From NCBI GenBank assembly GCA_002269645.1, contig NIVC01000012.1, positions 248,001 to 312,000 on the forward strand: a DNA stretch of 64,000 bases. Reading direction: 5' to 3'. Positions 4,545 through 52,065 of this stretch are shown in pieces. The notes under the pieces are model-generated. The model was not told the DNA's origin, did not search any database, and saw only the letters and a program-made list of their open reading frames with translations. A program made the translations under genes and the position numbers. Position 1 is the first letter of the stretch; every line of letters starts with the position of its first letter. This DNA comes from Macrostomum lignano. Taxonomy: Eukaryota.

Positions 4545-4590
4545 CTGCGAGAATGAGATTGATACAGAGATAGTTAAGTGATAGCTAATG

Positions 4591-14569: not shown

Positions 14570-15682
14570 TCTCCTATCTCCTCTCCCCTCTCTCCTCTCT
14601 CCTCTTTCCTCTCTCTTCTCTCCTCTCTCCTCTCCCCTCTCTCCTCTCTCCTCTTTCCTCTCTCCTCTCTCCTCTCTCCTCTCCCCTCTCTCCTCTCTCC
14701 TCTTTCCTCTCTCCTCTCTCCTCTCTCCTCTCCCCTCTCTCCTCTCTCCTCTCTCCTCTTTCCTCTCTCCTCTCTCCTCTTTCCTCTCTCATCTCCCCTC
14801 TCTCCTCTCTCCTCTCTCCTCTCTCTCCTCTCTCTCCTCTCTCCTCTCTCCTCTCTCCTCTCTCCTCTCTCCTCTCTCCTCTTTCCTCTCTCTTCTCTCC
14901 TCTCTCCTCTCCCTCTCTCCTCTCTCCTCTTTCCTCTCTCCTCTCTCCTCTCTCCTCTCCCTCTCTCCTCTCTCCTCTTTCCTCTCTCCTCTCTCCTCTC
15001 TCCTCTCCCCTCTCTCCTCTCTCCTCTCTCCTCTTTCCTCTCTCCTCTCACCTCTTTCCTCTCTCATCTCCCCTCTCTCCTCTCTCCTCTCTCCTCTCTC
15101 TTCTCTCCTCTCTCCTCTCTCCTCTCTCCTCTCTCTTCTCTCCTCTCTCCTCTCTCCTCTCTCTTCTCTCTTCTCTTTTCTCTCTCTTCTCTCCTCTCTC
15201 CTCTCTCCTCTCTCTCCTCTCTCTCCTCTCTCTCCTCTCTCCTCTCTCTTCTCTCTTCTCTCCTCTCTCCTCTCTCCTCTCTCTTCTCTCTTCTCTTTCC
15301 TCTCTCCTCTCTCTTCTCTGTCCTCTCTCCTCTATCCTCTCTCCTCTCTCCTCTCTCTCCTCTCTCTCCTCTCTCCTCTCTCTCCTCTCTCCTCTCTCCT
15401 CTCTCTTCTCTCCTCTCTCCTCTCTCCTCTCTCTTCTCTCTTCTTTTTCCTCTCTCCTCTCTCCTATCTCCTCTCTCGTCTCTCTTCTCTCTTCTCTCTC
15501 CTCTCTCCTATCTCCTCTCTCTTCTCTCTTCTCTTTCCTCTCTCCTCTCTCCTCTCTCCTCTCCCCTCTCTCCTCTCTCCTCTCTCATCTCCACTCTCTC
15601 CTCTCTCCTCTCTCCTCTCTCTCCTCTCTCTCCTCTCTCCTCTCTCTCCTCTCTCTCCTCTCTCCTCTCTCCTCTCTCTTCT

Positions 15683-15732
<50 letters not shown>

Positions 15733-15972
15733 CTCCTCTCTCCTCTCTCCTCTCTCCTTCTCCTCTCTCTCTCTCTCTCTCTCCTCTCTCCTCTCTCCTC
15801 TCTCTTCTCTCCTCTCTTTCCTCTCTCCTCTCTCCTCTCTCTTCTCTCTTCTCTCTCCTCTCTCCTATCTCCTCTCTCTTCTCTCCTCTCTTTCCTCTCT
15901 CCTCTCTCCTCTCTCTTCTCTCTTCTCTCCTCTCTCTTCTCTCTCCTCTCTCTTCTCTCCTCTCTTTCTCTC

Positions 15973-16042
<70 letters not shown>

Positions 16043-16097
16043 TCTCTTTCCTCTCTCCTATCTCCTCTCTCTTCTCTCCTCTCTCCTCTCTCCTCTG
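14570..16097. repeat. 1.5-kb CT-rich microsatellite between the divergent genes
   Basis: Pure pyrimidine tract on + strand; source of the S/L/P ORFs. Confidence 0.96.
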
Positions 16098-18345: not shown

Positions 18346-19007
18346 GTCTGTCCGGCCTTCCTGTCCCAGCCGCTTGACATGTCATTTTACTATCCTACAG
18401 AATCTTTTCCTTCGTCTCCTCAAAGCTTTTCCGTTTATCAATCAGTCATATTCGTCTTTCCCTTTCCGGTCTTTCGTGTTCGTTCAAAACTTTTTTCTGA
18501 CGTAATTACGCTCGTAGTATACCGAAAAAGGTATACTAAAAGGTAATCTGTCTCTGTACCACTCCTTCAAATTAAAATTATGTTGATGTACTTATTGCAC
18601 TCACAAATAATTAATATTATTACTCCTAATATAAAGATTTTCTTTCGTGTTCGTTCGTCAAGCCTTTTACTTACATGTTTTATCGATACGTTTTAAATAG
18701 ATATTTGATAGCCTGGTAAGCAACTTGTTTTTAGTTTTATTATTTTGAAGGCCTTCAATGCTCGAAAAATTAATCCTAATAATTTTTGTCACAGCGAGTG
18801 TTTGTCCCCAGAACTCTTTACCCAGCTACACGCCACTCACCTGTAATGGGTATTTCTTGATGAGCTTATTATTATCTTCAAACATTCAATAATCAATAAT
18901 TGCGTCCATAAATGATTTTTGCTGACTTTGGCTACTTAAATTTTCTTTAATTTTTCTTCTTAATATTGTATGGCAAATTTAGAAGTTGAGGTAAGCTACA
19001 GTAAAAC

Positions 19008-20550
<1,543 letters not shown>

Positions 20551-21123: not shown

Positions 21124-21142
21124 GTGAGTTCGTGTCTGAGTG

Positions 21143-22623
21143 TGGTAGTGTGGTATAGTGTGGCATAGTGTGGCAGTGTGTGGCAGTGTGTGGTATAGTG
21201 TGGTATAGTGTGGCAGTGTGTGGTATAGTGTGGTATAGTGTGGTATAGTGTGGCATAGTGTGGCAGTGTGTGGCAGTGTGTGGTATAGTGTGGTATAGTG
21301 TGGCAGTGTGTGGTATAGTGTGGCAGTGTGTGGTATAGTGTGGTATAGTGTGGCAGTGTGTGGTATAGTGTGGTTTAGTGTGGCAGTGTGTGGTATAGTG
21401 TGGTATAGTGTGGTATAGTGTGGTATAGTGTGGCAGTGTGTGGTATAGTGTGGTAGTGTGTGGTATAGTGTGGTATAGTGTGACAGTGTGTGGTATAGTG
21501 TGGCATAGTGTGGCATAGTGTGGTATAGTGTGGCAGTGTGTGGTATAGTGTGGTATAGTGTGACAGTGTGTGGTATAGTGTGGCATAGTGTGGTATAGTG
21601 TGGCAGTGTGTGGTATAGTGTGGCATAGTGTGGTATAGTGTGGCAGTGTGTGGTATAGTGTGTGGTATAGTGTGGTATAGTGTGGCAGTGTGTGGTATAG
21701 TGTGGTATAGTGTGGTATAGTGTGGCAGTGTGTGGTATAGTGTGGTATAGTGTGGCAGTGTGTGGTATAGTGTGGCAGTGTGTGGTATAGTGTGGTATAG
21801 TGTGGCAGTGTGTGGTATAGTGTGGCAGTGTGTGGTATAGTGTGGCAGTGTGTGGTATAGTGTGGTATAGTGTGGCAGTGTGTGGTATAGTGTGGTATAG
21901 TGTGGCAGTGTGTGGTATAGTGTGGTATAGTGTGGCAGTGTGTGGTATAGTGTGGTATAGTGTGGCAGTGTGTGGTATAGTGTGGCAGTGTGTGGTATAG
22001 TGTGGTATAGTGTGGCAGTGTGTGGTATAGTGTGGCAGTGTGTGGTATAGTGTGGTATAGTGTGGCAGTGTGTGGTATAGTGTGGCAGTGTGTGGTATAG
22101 TGTGGTATAGTGTGGCAGTGTGTGGTATAGTGTGGCAGTGTGTGGTATAGTGTGGTATAGTGTGGCAGTGTGTGGTATAGTGTGGTTTAGTGTGGCAGTG
22201 TGTGGTATAGTGTGGTATAGTGTGGTATAGTGTGGTATAGTGTGGCAGTGTGTGGTATAGTGTGGTAGTGTGTGATATAGTGTGGTATAGTGTGGCAGTG
22301 TGTGGTATAGTGTGGCAGTGTGTGGTATAGTGTGGTATAGTGTGGTATAGTGTGGCAGTGTGTGGTATAGTGTGGTATAGTGTGGTATAGTGTGGTATAG
22401 TGTGGTATAGTGTGGTATAGTGTGGTATAGTGTGGTATAGTGTGGTATAGTGTGGTATAGTGTGGCAGTGTGTGGTATAGTGTGGTAGTGTGTGGTATAG
22501 TGTGGTATAGTGTGACAGTGTGTGGTATAGTGTTGTTTAGTGTTGCAGTGTGTGGTATAGTGTGGTATAGTGTGGTTTAGTGTGGTATAGTGTGGTATAG
22601 TGTGGTATAGTGTGGTATAGTAT
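21143..22623. repeat. 10/12-bp mixed tandem repeat (GTGTGGTATA / GTGTGGCAGTGT)
   Basis: Direct reading. Confidence 0.96.
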
Positions 22624-23109
22624 GGTAGAGTTTAAGTTAATCCATGTAGTAGAGTGTAAAGAGTAGAGTACAGAGTGCAGTGCTGTCTTATTTGGTAAAA
22701 GAATTCGCTCTTGTGTTTTTTTTCAATGTTGCAAGCCACTTTTCCAGTCGTCGCTTATAGATATGGTTGACAGCGCATATGAAGGAAATCTGATGGCGTG
22801 TCTTGTACCCAACACAGACTCGCTACAAATCCGTCTCAGCATCCGCCTTTCCTGGTTCCTGCCCCCGACCTCGCAACTGTTTAGAATGCATGGGAGAATT
22901 TCCCATCTCCGGAGCATCCAAGACTGTGGGCGATGGGACTTCCGCTTTGCTATTTACCCAGGGTTTAGGGGCCTGGCCTGGCGTTCATGACAGGGCCGGC
23001 AGAGGGCGGGTGCGACCAAACTAAAGTGTGAGCAGCGATAAATGTAAGGCTTTGACTGACTTTAAAAAGGGACAGGCAGTTATTCAGTTTATATCGGTAG
23101 ATTCCGTTA

Positions 23110-38573: not shown

Positions 38574-39473
38574 TCAGAATCTACTAACACGAATAGGAAT
38601 ATTTTCAGACACCAAATAGTCGTCTTGAAACACGACAACAATGTTGACTTCGAATTCGATTCGGAAATTGGTAGCCGAAACGCTTGGACAGGTGAACAGA
38701 CGCGGCAGCACCATGTGCAGAGGGATTTTAATCCCTCTGGGAGCGTCTCCATCAGCCACTTGGATATTCTGTATCTCAGTAGTCTCTTTAGCGTAGCCTT
38801 CCAGACAGCCGCAGGTCTCTACGCGTACCAGCTGCAGTTCTACACTTTTAATCCGAGTAGCGCACTGCTCAATGACTAGCTCGCCACTCAGTGGCTCAGA
38901 AATACTAATGTGACTCGATGTGAGTTGGCCGGTGACGCGAAATTTCGGTAGACTGGCCTTGTTCTGAACATTGACTACACTGTCCGGGCTGATAGCGAAA
39001 GTTACTGGCGTCTGCGAGCTCGGTTGGCCAGCATTCTTTGGATTGTATTCGACTAAGAACTCGCAAGTTTTGCTGAGATCTTTGTTCAATAGAGAGCGTT
39101 TTAAGTCCAATTGAAGCACGTACTGAATGTTAATGAACACTCCGTGGTATGTCTCATACAGTGTTTTGTTACCCTTGGATTTGAACGGTATTTCAAATGG
39201 GATTTCTGTTAATCCGGTGGTGAATTTGCCAGGCTTAGCTAGTTCTAGTGTGGCTCCGGTCAGTTGAATCGGCTTGATACTGTTATAGAATGCTTCGAAT
39301 ACTCCGACATTTTTTGAGCTAAGCTGCATGCTAACTGTGCCAGTCAGATTCAATGTGAGACCATTGTGACCGCAGTCTTGTTTGCATCGAATCACGGCAT
39401 AGCCGGAGATTGTGTCACCATCGGTGTACGTTTTGTTAATACGCTTCAAACGAATGTCTAAAGTGGCTGCCAT
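38574..39473 (-). CDS. VPS26C: VPS26C/DSCR3 (Retriever complex subunit), intronless, 299 aa
   Basis: LDIRLKR.NK.Y, MQLSSKNVGVFEAFYNSIKPIQL, LYETYHGVF.NIQY, ELQLVRVETCGC.EGY, PRLFTCP, FE.NIVV.F..DYL..EN all match DSCR3. Confidence 0.97.
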   Translation of the reverse strand: MAATLDIRLKRINKTYTDGDTISGYAVIRCKQDCGHNGLTLNLTGTVSMQLSSKNVGVFEAFYNSIKPIQLTGATLELAKPGKFTTGLTEIPFEIPFKSKGNKTLYETYHGVFINIQYVLQLDLKRSLLNKDLSKTCEFLVEYNPKNAGQPSSQTPVTFAISPDSVVNVQNKASLPKFRVTGQLTSSHISISEPLSGELVIEQCATRIKSVELQLVRVETCGCLEGYAKETTEIQNIQVADGDAPRGIKIPLHMVLPRLFTCPSVSATNFRIEFEVNIVVVFQDDYLVSENIPIRVSRF

Positions 39474-39564
39474 TGCGGTTGTAGAGTTGACACATGCAAA
39501 TAGATGGAGTTGAAATATATTAGAAAGACATGATAATTGATTACACCTGACCTAATAGCCAGAT

Positions 39565-39765
39565 GTACAACCGACAGCTCAGCCGTAGTTATTGCTCCAC
39601 TCCAAGGACTGGGGGGCACCCATTTTAAAGCTGGGTTAACTGCAGCAATGCAGAGTTAATGCGTCTTGCTCAAGGACACAAATTGTTGTGAGTGGGTCGA
39701 GAATCGAACCCCCTTAGACCTTTTAGTCGTGAATCCGACGCTCTAATAACCACTAGGCTGCAACC
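39565..39765 (-). mobile_element. tRNA-derived SINE family A (CORE-like), internally deleted
   Basis: Reverse complement of the head and core of 31343-31610 (cttgctcaaggacacaaattg...gggtcgagaatcgaaccc). Confidence 0.82.
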
Positions 39766-40304
39766 GACGTAGCGGTTGATCTTAATGATTTTAGATGACA
39801 AAAATGACAAATTTCAGTTCTAATGTTGTCAGCGTAAGTTACCCCCGAGGGGGGCTAAGCTGCTAGTCCTATATACTAAATATTAAGCGTTTTAACAGAA
39901 TAACTGAGACTACAGCGGTAGACCTAATTGTATTAGACAATGTAAAAAGCCTAAATTAGTTTAACTAAAGTATTCCTATGAATGCTACTTATGAAAATAA
40001 ACAAATGTAAGGCACAGAAGAGAGTTAATAAAGTAAAAAAACACCTGTCACAACGTATGAAATACTTTTGCATCGATTAGGCAGTTATTGTATTGTGTAT
40101 TATTAGAACAAACATAGTTTTAAATGCTTGACGTATGACTTATGCATGTACCACTGGACCTCTCACTGTGAACCAATGTGTTGAATAAAGATAAAGACTA
40201 CTTATCTACTTTACTCCCGGTGTTCTCAATCTTTATCAAGCAAGTTACTTACTGGCTCAGGTACAAAAGTTTTGTTAGCGCACAAATATTATTCTTTTAT
40301 ACTA

Positions 40305-40898
40305 CTAAGTAGCGATAGTAGTTTTAACCGACAAAGTCTGCAAACAAACTGGGCAAGAGTGCAAAGAGTCGTGCAACAGCCGATCGCAATCGATACAATA
40401 ATGAGACCGACAGTCGCTGCACTGGTAGGCTTCCGTGCTAGCGCCTAGTCTGTCGCCACATCCGCAACAGCCCGTACTGGCCGCCAAGGTGACCTCGGCG
40501 AATGCCTTCAACGGGAACAGGTGCTGATAGGATCTGGCCAGGTGAGCGGCGCTGGCCAAACTTAATCCGCAAATCCGACAATCAACCGGCAGCTCGCAGT
40601 AAAGACAGGCGCACTGGGGGCAGGCGTGAGCGGTGGCCCCGGCTGATAGTACGGTGCCGTGACAGGCGCAAATGCGGATGACATCCTGCTTGGATCTCGG
40701 CTGCTCCTGGCCATCCTGCCCAGCCGAGTAGGGGAAGCCCATTTTGATCAGAGCGGGATCGGGAGCGCTGGCCGGCGGCGGCAGGAAGCTGGACATGATG
40801 TCGGACAGATGGACAGCGTCTAGCGGCACAGAGTAGGTGCCACCAGTGGCCTGGGCGAGTTTGCGCAATACGCGAATATCCGCTGACAGAGATATTAC
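40305..40898 (-). CDS. GTF2H2: TFIIH p44 exon 3 (end of VWA, zinc finger CPQC...C, C-terminal C1/RING-like)
   Basis: tttacag|GTA acceptor; LA..TGG.Y.V.LD..HL, MGFP, CPQC...YCELP..C..CGL.L..A.HLARSY.HLFPL..F, C.DCD...HDSLH.CP.C. Confidence 0.95.
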   Translation of the reverse strand, partial: VISLSADIRVLRKLAQATGGTYSVPLDAVHLSDIMSSFLPPPASAPDPALIKMGFPYSAGQDGQEQPRSKQDVIRICACHGTVLSAGATAHACPQCACLYCELPVDCRICGLSLASAAHLARSYQHLFPLKAFAEVTLAASTGCCGCGDRLGASTEAYQCSDCRSHYCIDCDRLLHDSLHSCPVCLQTLSVKTTIAT

Positions 40899-40999
40899 CT
40901 GTAAATTGGGCAATTTATGGGAAAGGGACGCCAATTGGCAAGGTTTAGAAGGTAAAACAATGTTCCCTAGAGCTTGCACTTTGCCCTTGACGCATCATG

Positions 41000-41590
41000 G
41001 CGGAACAGAGACAGAGAGATGGAGAGAGGCTAGGAAGGAAAGCGTTGGGAGAAAGTAGAAAGAGGGTAAAGAGGGTAGACAAAGGATAGACGAGAGTGAG
41101 GATAGAGGGGAGAGATCTAAGGGGGGGGGGAGGGTAAAATGAGAGAAAGGGAAGCGGGGACGCGAGAGAGAGAGAGAGAGGAAATCAGGTAGAAAGTAAT
41201 TAGAAAGAGGGTAAAGAGGGTAGAGAAAGGATAGACGAGAGTGAGGATAGAGGGGAGAGATCTAAGGGGGGGAGGGTAAAATGAGAGAAAGGGAAGCGGA
41301 GACGCGAGAGAGAGCGGAAATCAGGTAGAGCGGAAAGCGGGTGGAGAGGGGAAGGTGGGTAGACAGGGGAAGGCGGGTAGAGAGAGGAAAGCGGGTAGAG
41401 GGGAAAGCGGGTAGAGGGGAAAGCGGGTAGAGGGGAAAGCAGGTAGAGAGGGCAAGGCGGGTAGAGAGGGGAAAGCGGGTAGAGGGGAAAGCAGGTAGAG
41501 AGGGCAAGGCGGGTAGAGAGGGGAAAGCGGGTAGAGGGGAAGGAGGGTAATTAGAGGAAAGCGGGTAGAGGGAAAGGAGGGTAGGAAGGG
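41000..41590. repeat. G/A-rich intronic repeats: a duplicated ~130-bp block and ~17-bp GCGGGTAGAGGGGAAA units
   Basis: 41060-41200 is repeated at 41215-41330, followed by tandem units. Confidence 0.8.
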
Positions 41591-41658
41591 TACAGATCTA
41601 GGACTTGAAAAACAGTAACAATAAAAGAAAAAAAGGCAGACAGAAATGATTCACTCAC

Positions 41659-42174
41659 CGAACACCTGATCCTAGCCTTGGCCAGTTTGCTAATGGTCGC
41701 ACCGATATCTCCCGGATCGCAGGTGCTCAAGGCTGACACCAGCACGAGAACCTCTTTGCAGGCGTGGCCTGGCAGGGGGCCCAGCGTGTCGTAGGCCATC
41801 TCCAGCAGGTTCTGAAATGACGCCTCCCCTTCGGGACGGGCGGTTTTGCCCGAGCCGGCCTGAGCCAAATCTTTTAGCGCGTCCAAATGTCGCCTGGGAT
41901 TGCCAGTGAGCTCGGTCACTCTCTCGGCCAGCTTCCGTCTGGTCAGCAGTACGCCCAGCTGTCCGATGGGATTCTGATCGAAGAATCCGGACACGAAGTT
42001 GCGCATTGCGGATAGGCAGGCGGCTAAACGGCAGGGTTTGAGATCGGCCAAGCCCATGGTCTCTGAGCAGTCCAGGCACAGCAGCAGGTGCCGCATCATG
42101 CCCAGCTTGCTGGCCCGGCCACCGCCGCCGGGTAGCAGGGCTGCCGCTGCGAGACGGTGCCGGCGCTTGCGGGC
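41659..42174 (-). CDS. GTF2H2: TFIIH p44 exon 2 (Ssl1-like VWA: KLGMMRHL...DLKP.RL...FFDQNPIGQLG...LSTCDPGDI)
   Basis: ccgcag|GCC acceptor and TCG|GTGAGT donor; 172 codons, phase 0/0. Confidence 0.95.
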
Positions 42175-42196
42175 CTGCGGGGTTTGGGGTTCGATA

Positions 42197-42372
42197 CTGA
42201 CTGACTGACTGACTGACTGACTGACTGACTGACTGACTGATTGACTGACTGACTGACTGACTGACTGACTGACTGACTGTCTGACTGACTGACTGTCTGA
42301 CTGTCTGACTGACTGACTGACTGACTGACTGACTGACTGACTGACTGTCTGACTGACTGACTGACTGACTAG
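42197..42372. repeat. (GACT)n microsatellite in GTF2H2 intron 1
   Basis: Direct reading. Confidence 0.95.
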
Positions 42373-42414
42373 CTAACTAAATAAGTCCAATGAGCCCAAT
42401 AACAATTCACCCAC

Positions 42415-42609
42415 CTGCTCCAGACGCCCAACAGCCCCAGCCAGGCGACCCTCCTCATCCTCAGCCAGGGCCTCCCAGGAGCGCTCGAACTGCGACTCCC
42501 AGCGAAAGCCGCCGCCAGAGAGCGCGGCCGCATCCTCGTCCTGAAGCCGGTAGCCGCTGGTGCCCGCTGTGGGTCGCGCAGACGGCTTTGCGAATCCGTA
42601 GTTTGCCAT
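42415..42609 (-). CDS. GTF2H2: TFIIH p44 exon 1 (RWESQFERSWEALAEDEEGRL)
   Basis: Matches the p44 RWE..YERTWE.L.EDE.G motif; CAG|GTGGGT donor, phase 0. Confidence 0.9.
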
Positions 42610-42684
42610 GCTGTTTGCTGTTCAAACTCTTGGCATGCATAAGCATGGGGCTGTGCCTGCTTGACTGACTGGCAATATGATTCA

Positions 42685-43165
42685 CTGGGGATCTGGGAGG
42701 CTGGCCCAGCAACTGAGGATCTGGGAGGCTGGCCCAGCAACTGACACTCTGGGAGGCTGGCCCAGCAACAGACACTCTGGGAGGCTGGCCCAGCAACTGA
42801 GAATCTGAGAGGCTTGCCCAGCAACTGAGCATCTGGGAGGCTGGCCCAGCAACTGGGGATCTGGGAGGCTTGCCCAGCAACTGAGCATCTGGGAGGCTGG
42901 CCCAGCAACTGGGGATCTGGGAGGCTGGCCCAGCAACTGACACTCTGGGAAGCTGGCCCAGCAACTGACACTCTGGGAGGCTGGCCCAGCAACTGGGGAT
43001 CTGGGAGGCTGGCCCAGCAACTGACACTCTGGGAGGCTGGCCCAGCAACAGACACTCTGGGAGGCTGGCCCAACAACTGACACTCTGGGGAGCTGCTGGC
43101 CCGGCAACGGAGGATCTAGGAGGCTGGCTCAGCAACTGGGGATCTGGGAGGCGGGCCCAGCAACT
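42685..43165. repeat. 28-bp GC-rich minisatellite (CTGGGAGGCTGGCCCAGCAACTGACACT) between SURF1 and GTF2H2
   Basis: Period 28 (42721, 42749, ...); about 17 units. Confidence 0.94.
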
Positions 43166-43348
43166 CTAGCATGGGCCCAGCATGTCTAAAACAAAGAAAA
43201 ATAAATAGTCAAGAACGAAAAACCATGTAAGAAGCCTATTTAAAAAAGCACAATAATTTTCATGAAAGATTTAATAGGTCAATAAAGTATTAAACTAATT
43301 CTGAGAGCATATGTATAGTACACAGATTATGATGTATAGTATCTTTCA

Positions 43349-43641
43349 TCATCGAATTCGCATAGCCCAGAACACCAGCAGCAGCGCGCCCAGAGAATAC
43401 CAGGTAACAATATAGGACAGGTGCTCGTTACGCAAGCTCAGTCTAGTCTGCCCGCCAATAGGAAAAGTGCCAGCAGATTCACTAGAATCCATGCCAGAAG
43501 CGCAGGCGTCAACAAAGAATGGCAGGGTGTTGAGCTCGCCGCTCAGAGCTTCGACATCGCGGCGTATGCGGCAGGTGACGCCGCGGCGAGCGCTGCGAGA
43601 CTGAGGCCCGACAGCGCCGCTGTTGGCCGGGCTGCGGGCGT
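43349..43641 (-). CDS. SURF1: SURF1 last exon (PIGGQTRLSLRNEHLSYIVTWYSL)
   Basis: ccgcag|AC acceptor, phase 1; diagnostic SURF1 C-terminal motif; stop TGA. Confidence 0.92.
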
Positions 43642-43659
43642 CTGCGGGCGATTCAAGGC

Positions 43660-44300
43660 ATGCTGCCTTCATCTCTGACCCTTCCCAACATGCTGCCTTC
43701 ATCTCTGACCCTTCCCAACACGCTGCCTTCATCTCTGACGCTTTCCAACATACTGCCTTCATCTCTGACCCTTCCCAACATGCTGCCTTCATCTCTGACC
43801 CTTCCCAACATGCTGCCTTCATCTCTGACCCTTCCCAACATGCTGCCTTCATCTCTGACCCTTCCCAACATGCTGCCTTCATCTCTGACCCTTCCCAACA
43901 CGCTGCCTTCATCTCTGACGCTTCCCAACATACTGCCTTCATCTCTGACCCTTCCCAACATGCTGCCTTCATCTCTGACCCTTCCCAACATGCTGCCTTC
44001 ATCTCTGACCCTTCCCAACACGCTGCCTTCATCTCTGACCCTTCCCAACATGCTGCCTTCATCTCTGACCCTTCCCGACATGCTGCCTTCATCTCTGACC
44101 CTTCCCAACATGCTGCCTTCATCTCTGACTCTTCCCAACATGCTGGCTTCATCTCTGACCCTTCCTAACCTGCTGCCTTCATCTCCGACCCTTCCTAACA
44201 TGCTCCCTTCATCTCTGACCCTTCCTAACATGCTTCCTTTATCTCTGACCCTTCCTAACATGCTGCCTTCATCTCTGACCCTTCCCTCCATGCTCCCTTT
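43660..44300. repeat. 30-bp minisatellite (CATGCTGCCTTCATCTCTGACCCTTCCCAA) filling a SURF1 intron
   Basis: About 21 near-identical units. Confidence 0.96.
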
Positions 44301-44369
44301 ACTTTTTTTCAGCCAACATGTATCTTAAATTTATTCAAGCATGAACCAGCAGCACCAATAGCTCCTCAC

Positions 44370-44594
44370 CGACAAGATAGCCTCCAACCAATCCAGCCGG
44401 TTCAGTCAGCCTCACCAAACCGGTCAATTCCACTCGGCCTCTCTGCTGCCATTGCGGCCTGGTAGCTGGATCGGCCAGCTTAGCCGGTACCCAGCCGCGA
44501 TTCACCAGGACACGCTCGCCGCTATCAGCCAATCGGAACGGAGTGATCACGTGATAGCCAACCCCGGCTCCGCTAGAGAATAGACTGTTGCCGC
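44370..44594 (-). CDS. SURF1: SURF1 middle exon (GYHVITPF...VLVNRGWVP...LTGLVRLTE)
   Basis: tgtgcag|GC acceptor and G|GTGAGG donor; 225 nt, phase 1/1; VNRGWVP motif. Confidence 0.92.
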
Positions 44595-44649
44595 CTGCAC
44601 AGGTGTTTGTGTTATGATAGAGTTTTATTAGTGTTTTTAAATATCTATT

Positions 44650-45200
44650 ACCGTATTAGTGTATTACCTATTACCGTATCAGATAGTGTATTACCTATTA
44701 CTGTATCAGATAGTATATTTCCTATTACCCTAATTAGTGGTAGTACCTATTACCCGAATTAGTGTATTACTAATTACCCTAATTAGTGTATTACCTATTG
44801 CCCTAATTAGTGTATTATCTATTACCCTAATTAGTGTATTACCTATTACCGTATCAGATAGTGTATTGCCTATTACCGTATCAGATAGTGTATTACCTAT
44901 TACCCTAATTAGTGTATTACTAATTATCCTAATTAGTGTATTACCTACTACCCTAATTAGTGTTTATCTATTACCCTAATTAGTGTATTAACTATTACCC
45001 TAATTACCTAATTATTTAATTATCTAATTACTCTAATTATCTATTACCCTAATTAGTGTATTACCTATTACCCTTATTAGTGCATTATACCTATTACCCT
45101 TATTAGTACATTACACATAATTCTCTAATTAGCGTATTACCAATTATCCTAGTTAGTATATTAACTTTTACCGTATCAGATACATGTAGTGTTACCTATT
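44650..45200. repeat. AT-rich ~21-bp degenerate tandem repeat (ATTAGTGTATTACCTATTACCCTA-like)
   Basis: Direct reading; lies in a SURF1 intron. Confidence 0.85.
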
Positions 45201-45395
45201 GTACTTTGTTAAAACTCTTGACACAAGGAGCGTCACTCTAGAACAATAACCACCAAATCTTGTCCTTATTAGTGTTTTATCTATTAGCTAAAACAGTAAA
45301 ACTTTTTAAAAATCAATTAGAACTCTATAAAATACTGGCTTTATATCTCTCACTAGCTACTAATTAGTATGAAATATATTATTATCAAAACTGAC

Positions 45396-45843
45396 CGTCA
45401 GCACCAGCACTTGATTTCGGATCGATAAGATGCCGCGGTCCAATCAGAACCTCGCCATCGTGATCGAATTCGCCTATAATTCTAACAGGTCTGAACTCCA
45501 TGTCGTCTAAAGACTTAGCCATCAGCTCCTTCACCGAGCCGCCATCAACAATCACAGGCGGTTGAGTAGTTCTCCTATTCAACGATTCAATCAAATCCAA
45601 TTTCCATTGCCGTCGATAAACCTGCCAGGTGCCTAAACAGAAGCAGATTGCTGGAAATGCTAGAAACCATTTGTTACGAGGACCGTCGCTATCGCGACCT
45701 TTGTAAGAGTTGGAGTAGCCGCGTTGCACTGTCGTGTATTTGAAAGCATGTTGGCTTGCTGCTTCTAGCAAAGGGTAATGCGGATTTCTCAAGCAGCGAA
45801 GTGGCTGTAGGAGCAGCACCGCTCGTTGACAATGAAAGCTGGA
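45396..45843 (-). CDS. SURF1: SURF1 first identifiable exon (transit-peptide-like N-terminus, LGTWQVYRRQWK, EFRPV...G.FDH); no initiator ATG
   Basis: Acceptor tttctttttcttgcag|TCC (phase 0) and donor G|GTCAGT (phase 1). The ORF-track start is a TTG inside the acceptor. Confidence 0.9.
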
Positions 45844-45884
45844 CTGCAAGAAAAAGAAATTTAACAGTTGCGAGCGCGCAAACT

Positions 45885-46190
45885 TGTACCTTCCTGTACC
45901 CCTGTGTCTACTTCCTGTACTCCCATGTCTACTTCCTGTACTCCCATGTCTACTTCCTGCACTCCCATGTCTACTTCCTGTGCCCCCATGTCTACTTCCT
46001 GTACTCCCATGTCTACTTCCTGTACTCCCATGTCCACTTCCTTTACTCCCATGTCCACTTCCTGTGCCCCCATGTCTACTTCATGTGGTCCCTTGTCTAC
46101 TTCCTGTGCCACCATGTCTACTTCCTGTACTCCTATGTCCACTTCCTGTACTCCCGTGTCTACTTCCTGTACTCCCATGCCTACTTCCTG
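45885..46190. repeat. 21-bp minisatellite (TGTCTACTTCCTGTACTCCCA)
   Basis: About 14 units, just upstream of the SURF1 acceptor. Confidence 0.93.
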
Positions 46191-46981
46191 AGACCTGGGA
46201 CTGCTTAACTTGTTATGTCACTTGCTAAGATAATATCTAAATTTAAATAAATACTTTTTTTATTTTTTTTAAAACAATTTTAACATATTTTAACAATTAT
46301 GAAAGGCCGAACTGCACATGAAAATGATAACAATCACCGTGATTATATAATTTATTGAATGCAATCAATTTTAGAGTATGCAATGGAACATGTCACATTT
46401 AACTAGGAAAGCAGACAAAAACTTATGTTAGATTTTATTAAAACAAATTCAGACAAGGGGTCAATAATTATGACAAGTGTAATCCCCTCTCACATTCTTC
46501 TGCAGGCTAACGGAGTTCAAGGCATTATAAATCATAAGAAAATTCAAAGGGCCTGTCAACTTAAGTTCATAAAGTGGTGTCTTTTATCATCCCCTTGCTA
46601 GTTCTCTATCCCAAGTCCAATTTTGTTGTTTTTTGCCAAACTTAGCTTCCAAGTGTCACTGTGAGCAGAATGACGTATCATTCGGGCAAATAGGTTACTT
46701 GGGCTCCACTTCATGAGCTTAAGTTGACAGGCTCTTTCTTAATTTGCTTTTCTTTCAACCCCGCAATTGCGATTGAAAATTAAATTAAATTTTTATTTGT
46801 CTGTTCTGTTTTAAATTAAATGCAACGCTCTTTATCTTTTTCATCATCCCACAACATGCCACTCTGGACACAAGGAGCGTCACTCTAGAAACAATAACCA
46901 CCAATCTTGTGCAAGGAGTACCACTCCACTCCAAGGCGTACTACGCAAGTCAGATTGAGGTCTTGAAGAGAATTTTTACTT

Positions 46982-47179
46982 CAGGAGGCGGAAAACTTCG
47001 GCCCACAAAGCCTCTCTATCCGGCCCTCGGGTCCTATTAAACCTTACAATAGCAAACCGACCGGCCCAAGGGTTCGCTGAGCTCTCTTCTCTCTTCTGTT
47101 ATTTCCTCGCCTCTCCTTTATCCCACCTCTTTTCCCTATTCTATCTTCTATCTTGAGGTAAAAAGGGTGCCGACCCCTG
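46982..47179 (+). mobile_element. ~200-bp hAT-like MITE with CT-rich interior
   Basis: Right end GGGTGCCGACCCCTG (reverse complement CAGGGGTCGGCACCC); degenerate left end CAGGAGGCGGAAAAC; shares internal motifs with 2938 and 54835. No clean TSD. Confidence 0.55.
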
Positions 47180-47418
47180 GTTTAGTCGAATGTTTAAGAT
47201 AGGTTCAGACGTTGTACTCGTGTATCGATACTTTTCAATAAACATTAGCCTCATTTTATAGCAAATCACAGTGTATACAAGGTGTAGTTTTATATAAAAT
47301 CATAATCTAAGCTGACGTTTGTTATTACTGATGTGGTTAGACTGACGATTTAAATCAAATTTCTTATAGTAAATATTCTAGCCCGAGCACGATCAAATTG
47401 AATGTGTTCACTTCATCA

Positions 47419-48642
47419 TCAATCGGTATCGCTATCGCTAAGCTGTAGATCATTCTGCAACAATTCCAAATCGCTGAGCACTTTTGTCGGAGCGGCAGAT
47501 GTTGCGGTGGTAACAGTAACAGCAGCAGCTGTTGTTGCAGGCTGCGCTGGAGGCTGACTGACGACTTCGACGAATTCTTCATCGGAAGAGGCGGAAGAAT
47601 CAGACGAGACAGAATCGTCATCGTCGTTAGAATTTAAAACTGCCGGCTTAGCCGGTTGAGAAGACTTTTGTTGTTGTTTCTTTAATTTCGGCTTCTGTGG
47701 GGCTTGAGTAGGCTTCTTAGCATCTGAATCGTCATCGTCTGATGAGGATAACGAAGAAGATGAAACTGAAGACACCGATGAAGCATCAGAAAGAGTGGCG
47801 GCGGCCACAACTTTTTCAGATTTCGACTTTTTAGCAACCGGCGGTTGTGGCTGCTTTTTCTGCTTTTTCTGCTGCTGCTCCAGTTCCTTTTTCTTTTGAG
47901 CTTTCTTCTTTTCTCTCTCCTGCTCTCGCTCTCTCTCCCGTTCTCTTTCCCTCTCTTTCTCTCGTTCTTTTTCGCGTTCACGTTCGCGTTTAGCCTCAGC
48001 TTCGGCTTCCGTGTCTGTCCCGTGCTCGTGTTTCTTTTTCTTTTTCTTCTGTGGCTGCTGCTGCTGCTGCTGTGAGGCAGCTTTCTCGGGCTTGCTTTTA
48101 CCAGTCTCACTAGACGATATCTTTCTATGGGAAGCTTGCACAGACGGCTGCTTGTGACTATTTGAACCAGAAACAGTGCCACTAGAAGAAGAAGACTTTT
48201 TCGGCACAGTTGTAGCCGCCGATGCCGCTTCAGCCGCTTTCATGCCCAGCTTCTTTTCAACCAAATCTAATTGGCACACTTCAATCCTAGCCTTCTTTAA
48301 TTGTACGTTCAAATTCACTCGCTCAATACGAGCCTCGCGAGTGATCGGGTCAAGAATTAACACGGCATCCTTGTGACACGGACGCTTGTGACCTTTGAAA
48401 ATAGTGTGCGACAGACTGCTAGCGGAGCCGTGAGCAAGCGAAACCGTGACATCGTCTGTAGAGCCGACCTCAACCAGACCCGGCTTAGACTGGTCCACAC
48501 TGGCTGGCATGAAGTCGTAGCGAAACGTAGAGAAACTTGCTCGATTCCTGGCGGCCGGTGTTGAACCGAACGTGTCGCCAATCTTCAGCGTGTACCGACC
48601 GCGCATGGCCGATGCCAGCGAAGTGTCAGACGATGAAGACAT
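47419..48642 (-). CDS. EAF1: ELL-associated factor (EAF1/2 family), single ORF of ~407 aa
   Basis: F.TFRYDFMPASVD, IFKGHKRPCHKDAVLI, V.LKK.R N-terminal EAF domain; acidic/Ser/Lys-rich middle; C-terminal LQNDLQLSDSD. First in-frame ATG is at 48642. Confidence 0.93.
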   Translation of the reverse strand: MSSSSDTSLASAMRGRYTLKIGDTFGSTPAARNRASFSTFRYDFMPASVDQSKPGLVEVGSTDDVTVSLAHGSASSLSHTIFKGHKRPCHKDAVLILDPITREARIERVNLNVQLKKARIEVCQLDLVEKKLGMKAAEAASAATTVPKKSSSSSGTVSGSNSHKQPSVQASHRKISSSETGKSKPEKAASQQQQQQPQKKKKKKHEHGTDTEAEAEAKREREREKEREKEREREREREREQEREKKKAQKKKELEQQQKKQKKQPQPPVAKKSKSEKVVAAATLSDASSVSSVSSSSLSSSDDDDSDAKKPTQAPQKPKLKKQQQKSSQPAKPAVLNSNDDDDSVSSDSSASSDEEFVEVVSQPPAQPATTAAAVTVTTATSAAPTKVLSDLELLQNDLQLSDSDTD

Positions 48643-48764
48643 CCGATCGGTGTCAATACTTCCAAGATTTATGATTTTCAAACGTCAATGTTTCTATTGT
48701 GAAAATCATGAATAGAAATTATGGTCACAAATTATTTAGGATACGTAAGTTATTGCGATTATTC

Positions 48765-49400
48765 CACTGAGTACTCTACTGAGTATTCTACAGAGTACTC
48801 TACTGAGTATTCTACTGAGTACTCTACTGAGTATTCTACTGAGTACTCTACTGAGTATTCTACTAAGTACTCTACTAAGTACTCTACTGAGTACTCTACT
48901 GAGTATTCTACTGAGTACTCTACTGAGTATTCTACAGAGTACTCTACTGAGTATTCTACAGAGTACTCTACTGAGTATTCTACTGAGTACTCTACTGAGT
49001 ATTCTACTAAGTACTCTACTGAGTACTCTACTGAGTACTCTACTGAGTATTCTACTGAGTACTCTACTGAGTATTCTACTGAGTATTCTACTGAGTACTC
49101 TACTGAGTATTCTACTGAGTACTCTACTGAGTATTCTACTGAGTACTCTACTGAGTATTCTACTGAGTACTCTACTGAGTATTCTACTGAGTACTCTACT
49201 GAGTATTCTACTGAGTATTCTACTGAGTATTCTACTGAGTATTCTACTGAGTATTCTACTGAGTATTCTACTGAGTACTCTACTGAGTATTCTACTGAGT
49301 ACTCTACTGAGTATTCTACTGAGTATACCATTGATTAATCTACTCACTAATCTACTAAGTATTTTATTGAGTACTTTACTGAATACTCTACCGAGGCAAT
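48765..49400. repeat. 12-bp minisatellite (TACTGAGTA[C/T]TC)
   Basis: Direct reading; source of the STEY ORF. Confidence 0.96.
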
Positions 49401-49959
49401 CAGTAAAGTACTAACCGGGACCGGTTCTACTTAACTTACTTAACTTATACCAATGGTTTTTTCTTAGACAATCTTTAATTCAGTCAGTGAGTCTCTCAGA
49501 TATATGATTACGAGTAGAATATAAAAATGACAATATACTATATGGCTCTATCTCTATTGATAATAATTAATGATATAATATTTAGACGAACTTATTAAAA
49601 GGTTATTTTTGTATAAGAGACAAGACAACATAAAAAGGAAGATAATTTTAACCAGATTGGCACTATATATTTTACAATTACTATATATTCATTTAGAAGC
49701 CTTCTAACAACACAAAAGATTAACAAATCATAAACATATTTCAACGACTAATTGTATGCTTAAGCATAAAGTAAATTAACAACGCAAGAAACAAGTTAAT
49801 ATGTTTGACTATTAAGTTAATCTAACATGAAATACAATAAAACAATTTTTCTGAAATAAAATTTTAACAAAATATACAGAATTTAATTCCACAAAATCTT
49901 TATTTCAAACAGATTTTAAACAGGTTTGGATTCAATAGTCTAGCAGGTGGAAGGCGCTC

Positions 49960-50885
49960 GTCAGGGTTAGCGCCAATCTAATTGGTGTCAGGGTTAGCGC
50001 CAATCTAATTGGTGTTAGTGTTAGCGCCAATCTAATTGGTGTCAGGGTTAGCGCCAATCTAATTGGTGTCAGGGTTAGCGCCAATCTAATTGGTGTCAGG
50101 GTTAGCGCCAATCTAATTGGTGTCAGGGTTAGCGCCAATCTAATTGGTGTCAGGGTTAGCGCCAATCTAATTGGTGTCAGGGTTAGCGCCAATCTAATTG
50201 GTGTCAGGGTTAGCGCCAATCTAATTGGTGTCAGGGTTAGCGCCAATCTAATTGGTGTCAGGGTTAGCGCCAATCTAATTGGTGTCAGGGTTAGCGCCAA
50301 TCTAATTGGTGTCAGGGTTAGCGCCAATCTAATTGGTGTCAGGGTTAGCGCCAATCTAATTGGTGTCAGGGTTAGCGCCAATCTAATTGGTGTCAGGGTT
50401 AGCGCCAATCTAATTGGTGTCAGGGTTAGCGCCAATCTAATTGGTGTCAGGGTTAGCGCCAATCTAATTGGTGTCAGGATTAGCGCCAATCTAATTGGTG
50501 TCAGGGCGCCAATCTAATTGGTGTCAGATGGAGCGCCAATCTAATTGATGTCAGGGTTAGCGCCAATCTAATTGATGTCAGGGTTAGCGCCAATCTAATT
50601 GATGTCAGGGCGCCAATCTAATTGGTGTCAGATGGAGCGCCAATCTAATTGATGTCAGGGTTAGCGCCAATCTAATTGATGTCAGGGCGCCAATCTAATT
50701 GGTTTCAGATGGAGCGCCAATCTAATTGGTGTTAGGGGTTAGCGCCAATCTAATTGGTGTCAAATGGAGCGCCAATCTAATTGGTGTCAGGGTTAGCGCC
50801 AATCTAATTGGTGTCAGATGGAGCGCCAATCTAATTGGTGTCAGATAGAGCGCCAATCTAATTGGTGTCAGGTTTAGCGTCAAAC
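49960..50885. repeat. 27-bp minisatellite (GTCAGGGTTAGCGCCAATCTAATTGGT)
   Basis: About 19 identical units, then degenerate variants. Confidence 0.96.
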
Positions 50886-50964
50886 GGAAGGTGTCAGATG
50901 GGACCAAAACGTGTCAGGGAAGCGCCAAAATTGCAAATAGAAATGAAAACAAAAGCAAAATTAA

Positions 50965-51435
50965 TCACAACAAAATGCGATACTTCTCGCTTTTAGGCAC
51001 GTGACTAATCACTAGGCGACCATCGTAGCTCAAGGACGCGAATAGCCAAGGATCCGTTGCGCACCACACAGCGGCATAGACGCTATCCTCGTGTTCTTCA
51101 ACAACTGACACAGTGCGATCCTCGTCTAGCTCTGGCTGCTGCTGTCGTCTATCGTCGTCATCGTCATCATCGTCTAGATCGTCGTCTAGAGACAGTACCG
51201 GTTCGGACGAGATGCTACGATTATTAGTTAGATAAACTTTAGCGTCAGTACCGCCAGACAGTACCAATTGATCATGGTAGGGGTTGAATTGGACGCAACA
51301 GGCCCAGTGCTTGTGTAGGCGAAGCATCTTCACAGGATTGGATGGTTGTCGGGTGTCCCAGAATCTGATTGCACCATCATCTCCGGAGCTGGCTAAATAG
51401 TATTGCTTGTTCGGGTTGTAGTCCACGCACCGAGC
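50965..51435 (-). CDS. EIPR1: EIPR1/TSSC1 WD40 exon 3 (DYNPNKQYYLASSGDD...HEDSVYA..W...DPWLFASLSYDGRLVI.HVP..EKYRILL)
   Basis: cacaag|GCT acceptor, phase 0; diagnostic C-terminus. Confidence 0.95.
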   Translation of the reverse strand, partial: ARCVDYNPNKQYYLASSGDDGAIRFWDTRQPSNPVKMLRLHKHWACCVQFNPYHDQLVLSGGTDAKVYLTNNRSISSEPVLSLDDDLDDDDDDDDRRQQQPELDEDRTVSVVEEHEDSVYAAVWCATDPWLFASLSYDGRLVISHVPKSEKYRILL

Positions 51436-51469
51436 CTTGTGGTGGGTAGGTTTAGGCGCTTACTTAGCT

Positions 51470-52065
51470 GGGTTTCAGGGAGTGATTTAGGGTAGATTTT
51501 AGGGAGTGATTTAGGCTAGGTTTCTAGGGGGTGATTTAGGGTAGGTTTCTAGGGGTGATTTAGGGTAGGTTTTAGGGAGTGATTTAGGTTAGGTTTCTAG
51601 GGGTGATTTAGGGTAGGTTTTAGGGAGTGATTTAGGTTAGGTTTCTAGGGGTGATTTAGGGTAGGTTTTAGGGAGTGATTTAGGTTAGGTTTCTAGGGGT
51701 GATTTAGGGTAGGTTTCTAGGGGTGATTTAGGTTAGGTTTCTAGGGGTGATTTAGGGTAGGTTTCTAGGGGTGATTTAGGGTAGGTTTCTAGGGGTGATT
51801 TAGGGTAGGTTACTAGGGAGTGATTTAGGGTAGGTTACTAGGGAGTGATTTAGGGTAGGTTACTAGGGAGTGATTTAGGGTAGGTTTCTAGGGAGTGATT
51901 TAGGGTAGGTTTCTAGGGAGTGATTTAGGGTAGGTTTCTAGGGTTGATTTAGGGTAGGTTTCTAGAGGGTGATTTAGGGTAGGTTTCTAAGGGGTGATTT
52001 AGGGTAGGTTTCTAGAGGGTGATTTAGGGTAGGTTTCTAGGGGGTGATTTAGGGTAGGTTTCTGA
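51470..52065. repeat. 23-24-bp G-rich minisatellite containing TTTAGGG (GGGGTGATTTAGGGTAGGTTTCTA)
   Basis: About 25 units in EIPR1 intron 2. Confidence 0.93.

What the first reader, a model, noticed from the sequence alone, without database searches (positions are those of the whole stretch)
45396..45870. SURF1 lacks a genomic start codon: the spliced-leader AUG may be its initiator Met
The first recognisable exon opens at a strong acceptor (tttctttttcttgcag|TCC) in phase 0. The first in-frame ATG lies ~105 codons later, after the conserved TM1/LGTWQ motif. Upstream are a 21-bp array and AT-rich DNA in which I found no convincing ATG exon with a phase-0 donor. Flatworm spliced leaders end in a conserved AUG that can act as the initiator (established). 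Adding it gives M-SSFHCQRAVLLLQPLRCLRNP...QRGY/S, an Arg-rich, nearly acid-free mitochondrial presequence with an R-3-type cleavage motif. Trans-splicing would then be obligatory for making this complex IV assembly factor.
Basis: partly seen in the sequence, partly recalled or inferred. Interest (0 to 1): 0.8.

Follow-up and report, generated by a model that had tools for sequence, protein, structure and literature searches.

The report
SURF1 gene without its own start codon
In the flatworm Macrostomum lignano the gene for SURF1, a mitochondrial helper that assembles cytochrome oxidase, has no usable start codon in the genome. It most likely borrows the AUG at the end of the trans-spliced leader RNA, a trick already known in flatworms, so this is a tidy example and not a new mechanism.

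Summary
The window is Macrostomum lignano (scaffold NIVC01000012.1). SURF1 lies on the minus strand in three exons: 45843-45396, 44594-44370 and 43641-43349. Exon 1 opens in phase 0 at the strongest acceptor of the region (tttctttttcttgcag|TCC). No in-frame ATG lies upstream of it before a stop. The first in-frame genomic ATG is codon 108, which falls after TM1/LGTWQ, inside the Pfam SURF1 domain, and behind four out-of-frame ATGs.

M. lignano has one 35-nt spliced leader, and it ends in ATG. The acceptor fits the published trans-splice motif [T/C]TNCAG. Joining the leader gives a 322-aa protein whose distance from Met to the GxWQ motif (72) is typical of 115 orthologues (median 69). GenBank marks all three genomic copies as 5'-partial, starting 0-12 nt from this acceptor, with no upstream exon.

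I could not reach any reads or transcripts, so the trans-splice junction itself is inferred. One cis-exon rival exists (ATG 46535, donor GTGAGA at 46493, phase 0), but exons of that quality arise by chance in 29% of simulations.

The mechanism is established in flatworms (Cheng et al. 2006). This is a new member of a known kind, of modest interest (0.3), not the 0.8 proposed.

The parts
45844..45863 (-). Proposed SL trans-splice acceptor: pyrimidine tract plus AG (taaatttctttttcttgcag|). The exon starts at 45843.
   Evidence: Read directly. Best of 376 AG sites in 43300-47425. cTTGCAG fits the published M. lignano trans-splice motif [T/C]TNCAG (PMC8629364).
45396..45843 (-). SURF1 exon 1 (448 nt), open from its first base in phase 0. 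It encodes the presequence, TM1 and the LGTWQ motif (motif at 45636-45622).
   Evidence: 100% match to PAA94267.1. The Pfam SURF1 domain starts at residue 63. 0 of the first 160 nt and 4 of 448 nt differ from copy L003, against 3.5% in the intergenic DNA.
45520..45522 (-). First in-frame genomic ATG (codon 108 of the exon, Met109 of the SL-joined protein). It lies after TM1 and inside the SURF1 domain.
   Evidence: It is the start that the older UniRef models of 214 aa chose. Four out-of-frame ATGs precede it in the mRNA.
44370..44594 (-). SURF1 exon 2 (225 nt; GYHVITPF...VNRGWVP).
43349..43641 (-). SURF1 exon 3 with stop codon TGA at 43351-43349. It encodes TM2. An alternative acceptor 10 nt downstream (43632) shifts the frame and gives the 254-aa model annotated for copy L003.
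   Evidence: ATTAAA signal at 43275, 76 nt after the stop.
45890..46190 (.). 21-bp minisatellite in the presumed outron: 14.3 copies here and about 52 in copy L003. Its ATGs are out of frame, and its GT sites score below -1.8 as donors.
46081..46083 (-). First in-frame stop upstream of exon 1. It closes the frame, and no ATG lies between it and the acceptor.
46494..46535 (-). Rival candidate cis exon: ATG plus 13 codons (MIYNALNSVSLQKN), then the phase-0 donor AAT|GTGAGA. It would leave a 649-nt intron.
   Evidence: donor score 3.29. It arises by chance in 29% of simulations. It abuts a 214-bp inverted-repeat element at 46536-46749. It is absent from all three GenBank models.
47419..48672 (-). 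Upstream co-oriented gene, an EAF homologue. Its likely real ATG is at 48642. It may be the first gene of a shared transcription unit with SURF1.
   Evidence: PF09816, E = 1.1e-17. AATAAA signals at 46797, 46439, 46356 and 46264.

Best explanation
The M. lignano SURF1 pre-mRNA is SL trans-spliced at the acceptor ending at 45844. It is possibly transcribed together with the upstream EAF gene. Trans-splicing places the 35-nt leader ...UUAUUGCAUG directly in front of UCC AGC UUU.... The leader's terminal AUG is the only AUG in the SL and becomes the first AUG of the mature mRNA. It then serves as the initiator codon for a 322-aa SURF1: Met, a presequence of about 44 residues, TM1 with LGTWQ, the intermembrane-space domain, and TM2.

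Without the leader there is no in-frame AUG until codon 108. A scanning ribosome would first meet four out-of-frame AUGs, so full-length SURF1 can be made only from trans-spliced mRNA.

Shown here: the gene structure, the missing genomic ATG, the phase and strength of the acceptor, the SL sequence (from the literature) and the 5'-partial public annotation. Inferred: that this acceptor actually receives the SL, that translation starts at the SL AUG, the mitochondrial cleavage site, and the operon link to EAF.
For: 1. Organism and SL. P0001 is PAA94267.1 of M. lignano at 100% identity, on scaffold NIVC01000012.1. The SL is CGGTCTCTTACTGCGAAGACTCAATTTATTGCATG, carried by 30-39% of genes (PMC8629364; PMC5730564). 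The terminal ATG is conserved in M. cliftonense and M. hystrix, and those authors call it a likely start codon (PMC10468722).
2. No genomic start. There is no in-frame ATG between the stop at 46083 and codon 108. The Pfam SURF1 domain begins at residue 63.
3. Acceptor. It ranks 1 of 376 AG sites, fits [T/C]TNCAG and is in phase 0.
4. Annotation. The CDS is 5'-partial in all three GenBank copies, starting 12 nt (L001, L002) or -3 nt (L003, right after a tandem TAG acceptor) from the junction. No upstream exon is annotated, although the annotation was built from RNA-seq with StringTie/TACO and cut at SL-read peaks by TBONE. Two older gene models fall back on Met109.
5. N-terminal length. From Met to the G of GxWQ is 72 residues with the SL Met, against a median of 69 in 115 orthologues. 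No orthologue starts after the motif.
6. Scanning. The SL AUG is the first AUG, in the context uugcAUGu. Four out-of-frame AUGs precede Met109.
7. Constraint. The 5' 160 nt of exon 1 are identical between diverged copies, while the intergenic DNA differs by 3.5%.
8. Precedent. The flatworm SL AUG is a proven initiator (Cheng et al. 2006, cited).
Against: - No read, EST or transcript showing SL joined to TCCAGC could be retrieved. The exact-sequence look-up of the M-prefixed protein found nothing, the N-terminal search found nothing, and the supplements held no entry.
- The GenBank CDS of the window copy starts 12 nt downstream of the acceptor, not exactly at it. This offset is unexplained.
- A cis exon with a consensus-type donor in the right phase exists at 46535-46494.
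- The gene's own intron-1 donor is non-consensus (GTCAGT), so weak donors cannot be dismissed in this species.
- 'Partial' CDS calls are common among the neighbours for trivial reasons: EAF and Vps26 are also 5'-partial.
- The presequence has fewer basic residues than most orthologues.
Confidence: 0.75

Rival explanations
1. A cis-spliced first exon supplies the ATG. The best candidate is 46535-46494 (MIYNALNSVSLQKN), with donor AAT|GTGAGA joined to TCC over a 649-nt intron. Weaker candidates are the ATGGGA|GT and ATG...GAA|GT sites inside the 21-bp array.
For: - The phase-0 donor matches the species' cis-donor motif GT[G/A]AG. Its score of 3.29 sits between the gene's own donors at 2.26 and 3.54.
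- The candidate is retained in copy L003 with one synonymous change.
- The strong acceptor would serve cis-splicing equally well. Sharing of acceptors between cis- and trans-splicing is reported in flatworms (PMC12582326).
Against: - An exon of this quality arises by chance in 29% of composition-matched simulations.
- Its divergence of 1 in 42 nt is like the neutral flanks.
- It sits against an inverted-repeat element, and possibly inside the EAF 3' UTR.
- None of the three RNA-seq-derived GenBank models, nor the older models, contains it.
- The array donors score below -1.8, and the array copy number varies from 14 to about 52 between copies.
- It would add 14 residues to a presequence that is already of typical length.
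Confidence: 0.13
2. Translation starts at a genomic codon inside exon 1. This would be either Met109, giving a 214-aa protein without TM1 as in the UniRef models, or a near-cognate codon such as the in-frame GTG/CTG at codons 9-11. Alternatively, these copies are decaying pseudogenes.
For: - Two older gene models (A0A1I8HSX4, A0A1I8H5Y1) start at Met109.
- All four exon-1 differences between the copies are non-synonymous.
- The L003 model uses a frame-shifting exon-3 acceptor.
Against: - Met109 removes the presequence, TM1, LGTWQ and the first 45 residues of the Pfam domain.
- None of 115 orthologues starts after the motif.
- Four out-of-frame AUGs precede Met109.
- The frame is kept open over 107 codons in all three copies, and the first 160 nt are identical where neutral DNA differs by 3.5%.
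- If the SL is present, its AUG comes first anyway.
Confidence: 0.05
3. The missing ATG is an assembly or polishing artefact of Mlig_3_7, or a missing piece of sequence.
For: The assembly was polished with Pilon using RNA-seq reads (PMC5730564). An odd SL-like change is seen at the Vps26 junction 6 kb away.
Against: - Three separately assembled copies agree on the acceptor AG and the open frame. Two single-base differences in the tract look natural.
- There are no Ns or gaps.
- A polishing error of the kind seen at Vps26 would create an ATG, not remove one.
Confidence: 0.03

Closest known systems
Schistosoma mansoni mRNAs that use the SL 3'-terminal AUG as initiator Met (Cheng, Cohen, Ndegwa and Davis 2006, J Biol Chem 281:733; cited in PMC9851317, PMC12582326, PMC5832876)
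   Same: The SL is a flatworm leader ending in AUG and is joined in frame to an ORF that has no AUG of its own. The SL AUG gives the only correct start. That paper reported the SL AUG in frame with 28% of trans-spliced mRNAs, and more than 40 cDNAs that require it.
   Different: The species and lineage differ: a free-living macrostomorph against a parasitic trematode. The gene differs. Here trans-splicing and initiation are inferred, not shown experimentally.
slORFs, ORFs created by SL-supplied start codons (slORFfinder, PMC9851317)
   Same: It is the same concept: the start codon is contributed by the leader at the trans-splice site.
   Different: slORFfinder calls rest on SL-containing RNA-seq reads and ribosome footprints. 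Neither was available here, and M. lignano was not among the species analysed (0 mentions).
SURF1/Shy1 family (Pfam PF02104), cytochrome c oxidase assembly factor
   Same: There is a full-length domain match (E = 6.2e-45, profile positions 2-205 of 205). The protein has two flanking hydrophobic segments, the LGTWQ and VNRGWV motifs, and 38-45% identity to animal SURF1.
   Different: The orthologues examined have a genomic ATG in exon 1, including the flatworms Echinococcus multilocularis and Calicophoron daubneyi. The M. lignano gene does not.
M. lignano SL-resolved operons (Ustyantsev and Berezikov 2021, PMC8629364)
   Same: Five co-oriented genes (WD40, EAF, SURF1, SSL1/TFIIH-p44, Vps26) sit 0.7-2.3 kb apart, with much of the spacing made of minisatellites. 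The locus-tag series Mlig021063g2/g4 for two SURF1 copies suggests two genes per transcription unit.
   Different: Operon membership needs SL and poly(A) read evidence, which I could not see. The raw EAF-to-SURF1 distance is 1.6 kb, against the 1-kb repeat-adjusted threshold.

Membership tests
SURF1/Shy1 (PF02104) | Significant full-length match to the family profile | tested here: met
   154.5 bits against a cut-off of 23.4; residues 63-310 match profile positions 2-205 of 205. 1512 homologues at E <= 0.001, and the named ones are all SURF1.
SURF1/Shy1 (PF02104) | N-terminal and C-terminal transmembrane segments flanking the domain, with an N-terminal targeting extension | tested here: met
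   The hydrophobic stretch WFLAFPAICFCLGTWQV lies before the domain. The strongest Kyte-Doolittle peak is at residues 298-321. The N-terminal extension of 71 residues is typical of 115 orthologues. Actual import was not tested.
SL-AUG-initiated flatworm mRNAs (Cheng et al. 2006 class) | The organism's SL ends in AUG | tested here: met
   From the literature, not from the window: the 35-nt SL ends in ...TTGCATG (PMC8629364; PMC5173321). No SL gene lies in the window.
SL-AUG-initiated flatworm mRNAs (Cheng et al. 2006 class) | The mRNA is SL trans-spliced at this acceptor | not testable with these tools
   No reads or transcripts were reachable. Indirect support: the motif fits, the acceptor is the best in the region, and the annotated 5' ends of three copies lie at or near the junction.
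SL-AUG-initiated flatworm mRNAs (Cheng et al. 2006 class) | The SL AUG is in frame with the conserved ORF, with no intervening stop | tested here: met
   SL plus exons 1-3 gives one 322-codon ORF starting at the SL AUG.
SL-AUG-initiated flatworm mRNAs (Cheng et al. 2006 class) | No genomic in-frame AUG is able to give the complete protein | tested here: met
   None lies between the stop at 46083 and codon 108. The same holds in copies L002 and L003, and L003 has an in-frame TAG directly upstream. Caveat: a cis exon at 46535-46494 is not excluded.
SL-AUG-initiated flatworm mRNAs (Cheng et al. 2006 class) | Translation actually initiates at the SL AUG | not testable with these tools
   This needs ribosome profiling, reporter assays or in vitro translation.
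M. lignano operon (PMC8629364 criteria) | Co-oriented neighbours, a repeat-adjusted intergenic distance under 1 kb, and a trans-spliced downstream gene | tested here: inconclusive
   The genes are co-oriented. The raw distance from the EAF stop to the SURF1 acceptor is 1575 nt, of which 301 nt are the array and about 214 nt an inverted-repeat element. The EAF poly(A) site and the SL reads are unknown.

The most novel reading that the evidence does not exclude
All M. lignano SURF1 copies have irreversibly lost their genomic start codon, while the parasitic flatworms examined keep theirs. Complex IV assembly in this animal would then depend absolutely on SL trans-splicing.

The SL-tail heptamer TTGCATG, found in genomic DNA exactly at the Vps26 trans-splice junction in two of three copies, would then be real and not a polishing artefact. 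That would show that SL-bearing mRNA sequence can be copied back into the genome, giving a route by which SL-supplied and genome-encoded start codons could interconvert.
Probability: 0.1. Interest if true: 0.6.

Novelty: new member of a known kind. Interest (0 to 1): 0.3.

Why it matters
If confirmed, it gives a clean, conserved-gene example of obligatory SL-AUG initiation in a free-living, genetically tractable flatworm. So far the phenomenon has been documented mainly in Schistosoma.

It has a practical side too. The GenBank '5'-partial' proteins and the truncated 214-aa UniProt models of M. lignano SURF1 are annotation casualties of trimming the SL, ATG included. Other genes are probably affected in the same way. 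Pipelines that re-attach the SL AUG would repair them.

It does not open a new question. The mechanism has been textbook for flatworm trans-splicing since 2006.

Tried and rejected
- Transcript evidence. I looked up the M-prefixed full-length proteins (two allelic forms) by exact sequence; neither is in the collection. A search with the 108-aa N-terminus returned nothing, not even the self hit, so it is uninformative. Supplements of four M. lignano papers and a full-text search for the locus tag gave no hits.
- Transcription unit. A search with the EAF neighbour, meant to read its locus tag and test the shared-unit idea, returned nothing. The query was probably swamped by low complexity.
- Near-relative transcript. 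The best non-self hit, P0002 from a Logan RNA-seq contig, comes from an unidentified organism. It has a SMART-adapter 5' end and its own ATG, so it is not informative.
- Contiguous start. An ORF running upstream through the 21-bp array is open for 79 codons but contains no ATG. The array's ATGs are in another frame.
- Alternative acceptors. CCAG| at 45839 is out of frame. CAAG| at about 45881 is in frame but has no pyrimidine tract.
- SL gene or SL fragments in the window. There are none. The two ATTGCATG hits, at 56647 and 59960, are chance matches in non-coding AT-rich DNA.
- Copy comparison against the cis-exon rival. The candidate exon is too short (42 nt, 1 change) to discriminate.
- N-terminal similarity. 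The amphioxus SURF1 N-terminus (MSSFSFSRAT against MSSFHCQRAV) is suggestive of colinearity from residue 2. I treat it as anecdote, because presequences are not conserved.

Full report
**Identity and gene model**

[quoted passage not shown] The spliced translation of the candidate gene matches GenBank PAA94267.1 ('hypothetical protein BOX15_Mlig021063g4, partial') at 100% identity. The encoding contig is NIVC01000012.1 of assembly GCA_002269645.1, i.e. Mlig_3_7.

The gene is on the minus strand and has three exons:
- exon 1: 45843-45396
- exon 2: 44594-44370
- exon 3: 43641-43349

The two introns are largely filled by 24-bp and 30-bp minisatellites. The product is a bona fide SURF1. PF02104 matches at 154.5 bits over residues 63-310, covering the whole profile. 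The protein is 38-45% identical to animal SURF1 proteins and carries the LGTWQ and VNRGWV motifs and a C-terminal hydrophobic segment.

**The observation**

Exon 1 begins right after taaatttctttttcttgcag, with TCC in phase 0. On a simple pyrimidine-tract score this AG is the best of 376 AG sites between 43300 and 47425.

Reading upstream in frame, there are 79 sense codons with no ATG, then a stop at 46083-46081. These codons run through the 21-bp array at 45890-46190. The array's own ATGs are all in frame 2 and end in a stop before the acceptor.

The first in-frame genomic ATG is at 45522-45520, codon 108 of the exon. It lies 37 residues beyond the G of LGTWQ and 45 residues into the Pfam domain. 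In the mRNA it is preceded by four out-of-frame ATGs with ORFs of 29, 27, 6 and 4 codons, two of them in good context.

Two details needed correction:
- One plausible cis exon does exist upstream (see the rivals below).
- The N-terminus is not especially Arg-rich. It has 3 Arg in the first 30 residues, below the 10th percentile (4) of 93 orthologues. The first acidic residue (position 28) and the hydrophobic moment are typical.

**Does the organism have the required leader?**

Yes. M. lignano has a single 35-nt SL, CGGTCTCTTACTGCGAAGACTCAATTTATTGCATG, present on 30-39% of genes (PMC8629364; PMC5730564; PMC5173321). The terminal ATG is its only ATG. [quoted passage not shown]

The most enriched motif at M. 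lignano trans-splice acceptors is [T/C]TNCAG. The site here is cTTGCAG. No SL gene lies in the window.

**Evidence from the public annotation and the other copies**

The Mlig_3_7 annotation was built from RNA-seq with StringTie/TACO. Transcription units were cut at peaks of SL-trimmed reads by TBONE, and ORFs were called with TransDecoder. All three genomic SURF1 copies that I could fetch are annotated as 5'-partial, and none has an upstream exon:

| Locus | Scaffold | Where the CDS starts |
|---|---|---|
| L001 (the window) | NIVC01000012.1 | 12 nt downstream of the acceptor |
| L002 | NIVC01001060.1 | 12 nt downstream of the acceptor |
| L003 | NIVC01001395.1 | exactly after a tandem TAG in ttcttctag\|cag\|TCC |

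In L003 that TAG is also an in-frame stop, so the frame there cannot extend upstream at all. Two older UniRef models fall back on Met109 and give 214-aa proteins without TM1.

'Partial' alone is weak evidence, because the neighbouring EAF and Vps26 genes are also 5'-partial for trivial reasons. The 12-nt offset in L001/L002 is unexplained. For comparison, Vps26 shows offsets of about 0-4 nt among copies around one junction.

Copy L003 differs from the window by 3.5% in the EAF-SURF1 intergenic DNA but by only 0.89% in exon 1. There is no difference at all in the first 160 nt, the part that would be non-coding if Met109 were the start.

**Fit of the SL-joined protein**

Joining the SL gives one 322-codon ORF, MSSFHCQRAVLLLQPLRCLRNP.... 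The distance from Met1 to the G of GxWQ is 72. In 115 orthologues that begin with Met the median is 69 (range 11-98), and none begins after the motif. No further coding exon is therefore needed.

The context is uugcAUGu, with a purine at -3. QRGY|S fits an R-3-type cleavage motif; that is my reading of the sequence and was not tested.

**Rivals**

- *A cis-spliced first exon.* I enumerated all ATG...GT phase-0 combinations between the EAF stop and the acceptor and found 120. All but one have poor donors; the array sites score below -1.8. The exception is ATG 46535 to AAT|GTGAGA at 46493 (14 codons), which scores 3.29. The gene's own donors score 2.26 and 3.54. A candidate this good appears in 29% of first-order Markov simulations of the same 1235 nt. 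It abuts a 214-bp inverted-repeat element and may lie inside the EAF 3' UTR, since AATAAA signals occur at 46797, 46439, 46356 and 46264. It is absent from every annotation. I give this rival 0.13.
- *An internal or near-cognate start, or a pseudogene.* 0.05.
- *An assembly or polishing artefact.* 0.03.

**Comparison with orthologues**

In Echinococcus multilocularis and Calicophoron daubneyi the annotated SURF1 start is a genomic ATG in an exon that encodes the presequence. The state seen in M. lignano is therefore not general to flatworms.

**What is known, and the verdict**

The flatworm SL 3'-terminal AUG is an established initiator. Cheng et al. 2006 found it in frame with 28% of S. mansoni trans-spliced mRNAs and required by more than 40 cDNAs (as summarised in PMC9851317). 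The general class is now called slORFs.

I found no paper that analyses this phenomenon in M. lignano or mentions SURF1 in this context. The finding is thus a new member of a known kind. I put 0.75 on the SL-AUG explanation. The missing piece is a direct SL|TCCAGC junction read, which is a trivial check in public RNA-seq data but out of reach with the tools here. Interest is 0.3.

Noticed in passing
window 39493-39499 (minus strand); L001 12333-12339, L003 12177-12183, compared with L002 about 12645-12651: At the 5' junction of the Vps26 gene, copy L002 has a normal acceptor (ctatttttcag|TGTCAAC). The window copy and L003 read ctatTTGCATG|TGTCAAC instead. Four adjacent substitutions turn the acceptor into the last 7 nt of the spliced leader, exactly at the junction. 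These are the only TTGCATG occurrences on the gene strand in the three 14.5-kb loci. The cause is either a Pilon polishing artefact (the assembly was polished with RNA-seq reads) or a real allele copied back from SL-bearing mRNA. In this stretch L001 is closer to L003 than to L002, so the change may be shared by descent.
   Followed up: partly
window 38574-52000, minus strand (L001 1-13258): Five co-oriented genes lie in a row: a WD40/EIPR1-like gene, an EAF homologue (48672-47419), SURF1, SSL1/TFIIH p44 (42609-40305) and Vps26 (39488-38574). CDS-to-CDS gaps are 0.7-2.3 kb, and much of that spacing is minisatellite. This looks like one or more SL-resolved operons. The locus-tag series Mlig021063g2/g4 for two SURF1 copies hints at two genes per transcription unit.
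   Followed up: partly
window 1-2122, 4590-13639, 14568-16096, 19006-20550, 21139-22631 and many others: The window is extraordinarily rich in tandem arrays. Examples are a 9-kb array of the 10-bp unit GTTACAGTGA (about 890 copies), a 2.1-kb array of a 12-bp unit, and minisatellites of 20-33 bp in nearly every intron and intergenic spacer around SURF1 (units of 21, 24, 28 and 30 bp). The 21-bp array upstream of SURF1 has 14 copies here and about 52 in copy L003.
   Followed up: no
window 43632 and 43642 (minus strand); L003 protein P0122: Exon 3 of SURF1 has two acceptors 10 nt apart (cgcccgcag|acgcccgcag|). The GenBank model for copy L003 uses the downstream one, which shifts the frame and ends in a 254-aa protein lacking TM2. 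This may be a non-productive isoform or a mis-annotation.
   Followed up: no
window 46536-46749; also 46861-46910 against 45214-45263: A 214-bp element is bounded by 44-bp inverted repeats (84% complementary) in the EAF-SURF1 spacer. It looks like a MITE. Separately, a 50-bp segment (...acaaggagcgtcactctagaacaataaccaccaa...) occurs both in the spacer and in SURF1 intron 1 at 94% identity.
   Followed up: no
window 45390-45395 (minus strand): The donor of SURF1 intron 1 is ACG|GTCAGT. It has C at +3, outside the species' usual GT[G/A]AG motif, yet it is the junction used in the RNA-seq-based GenBank model.
   Followed up: no
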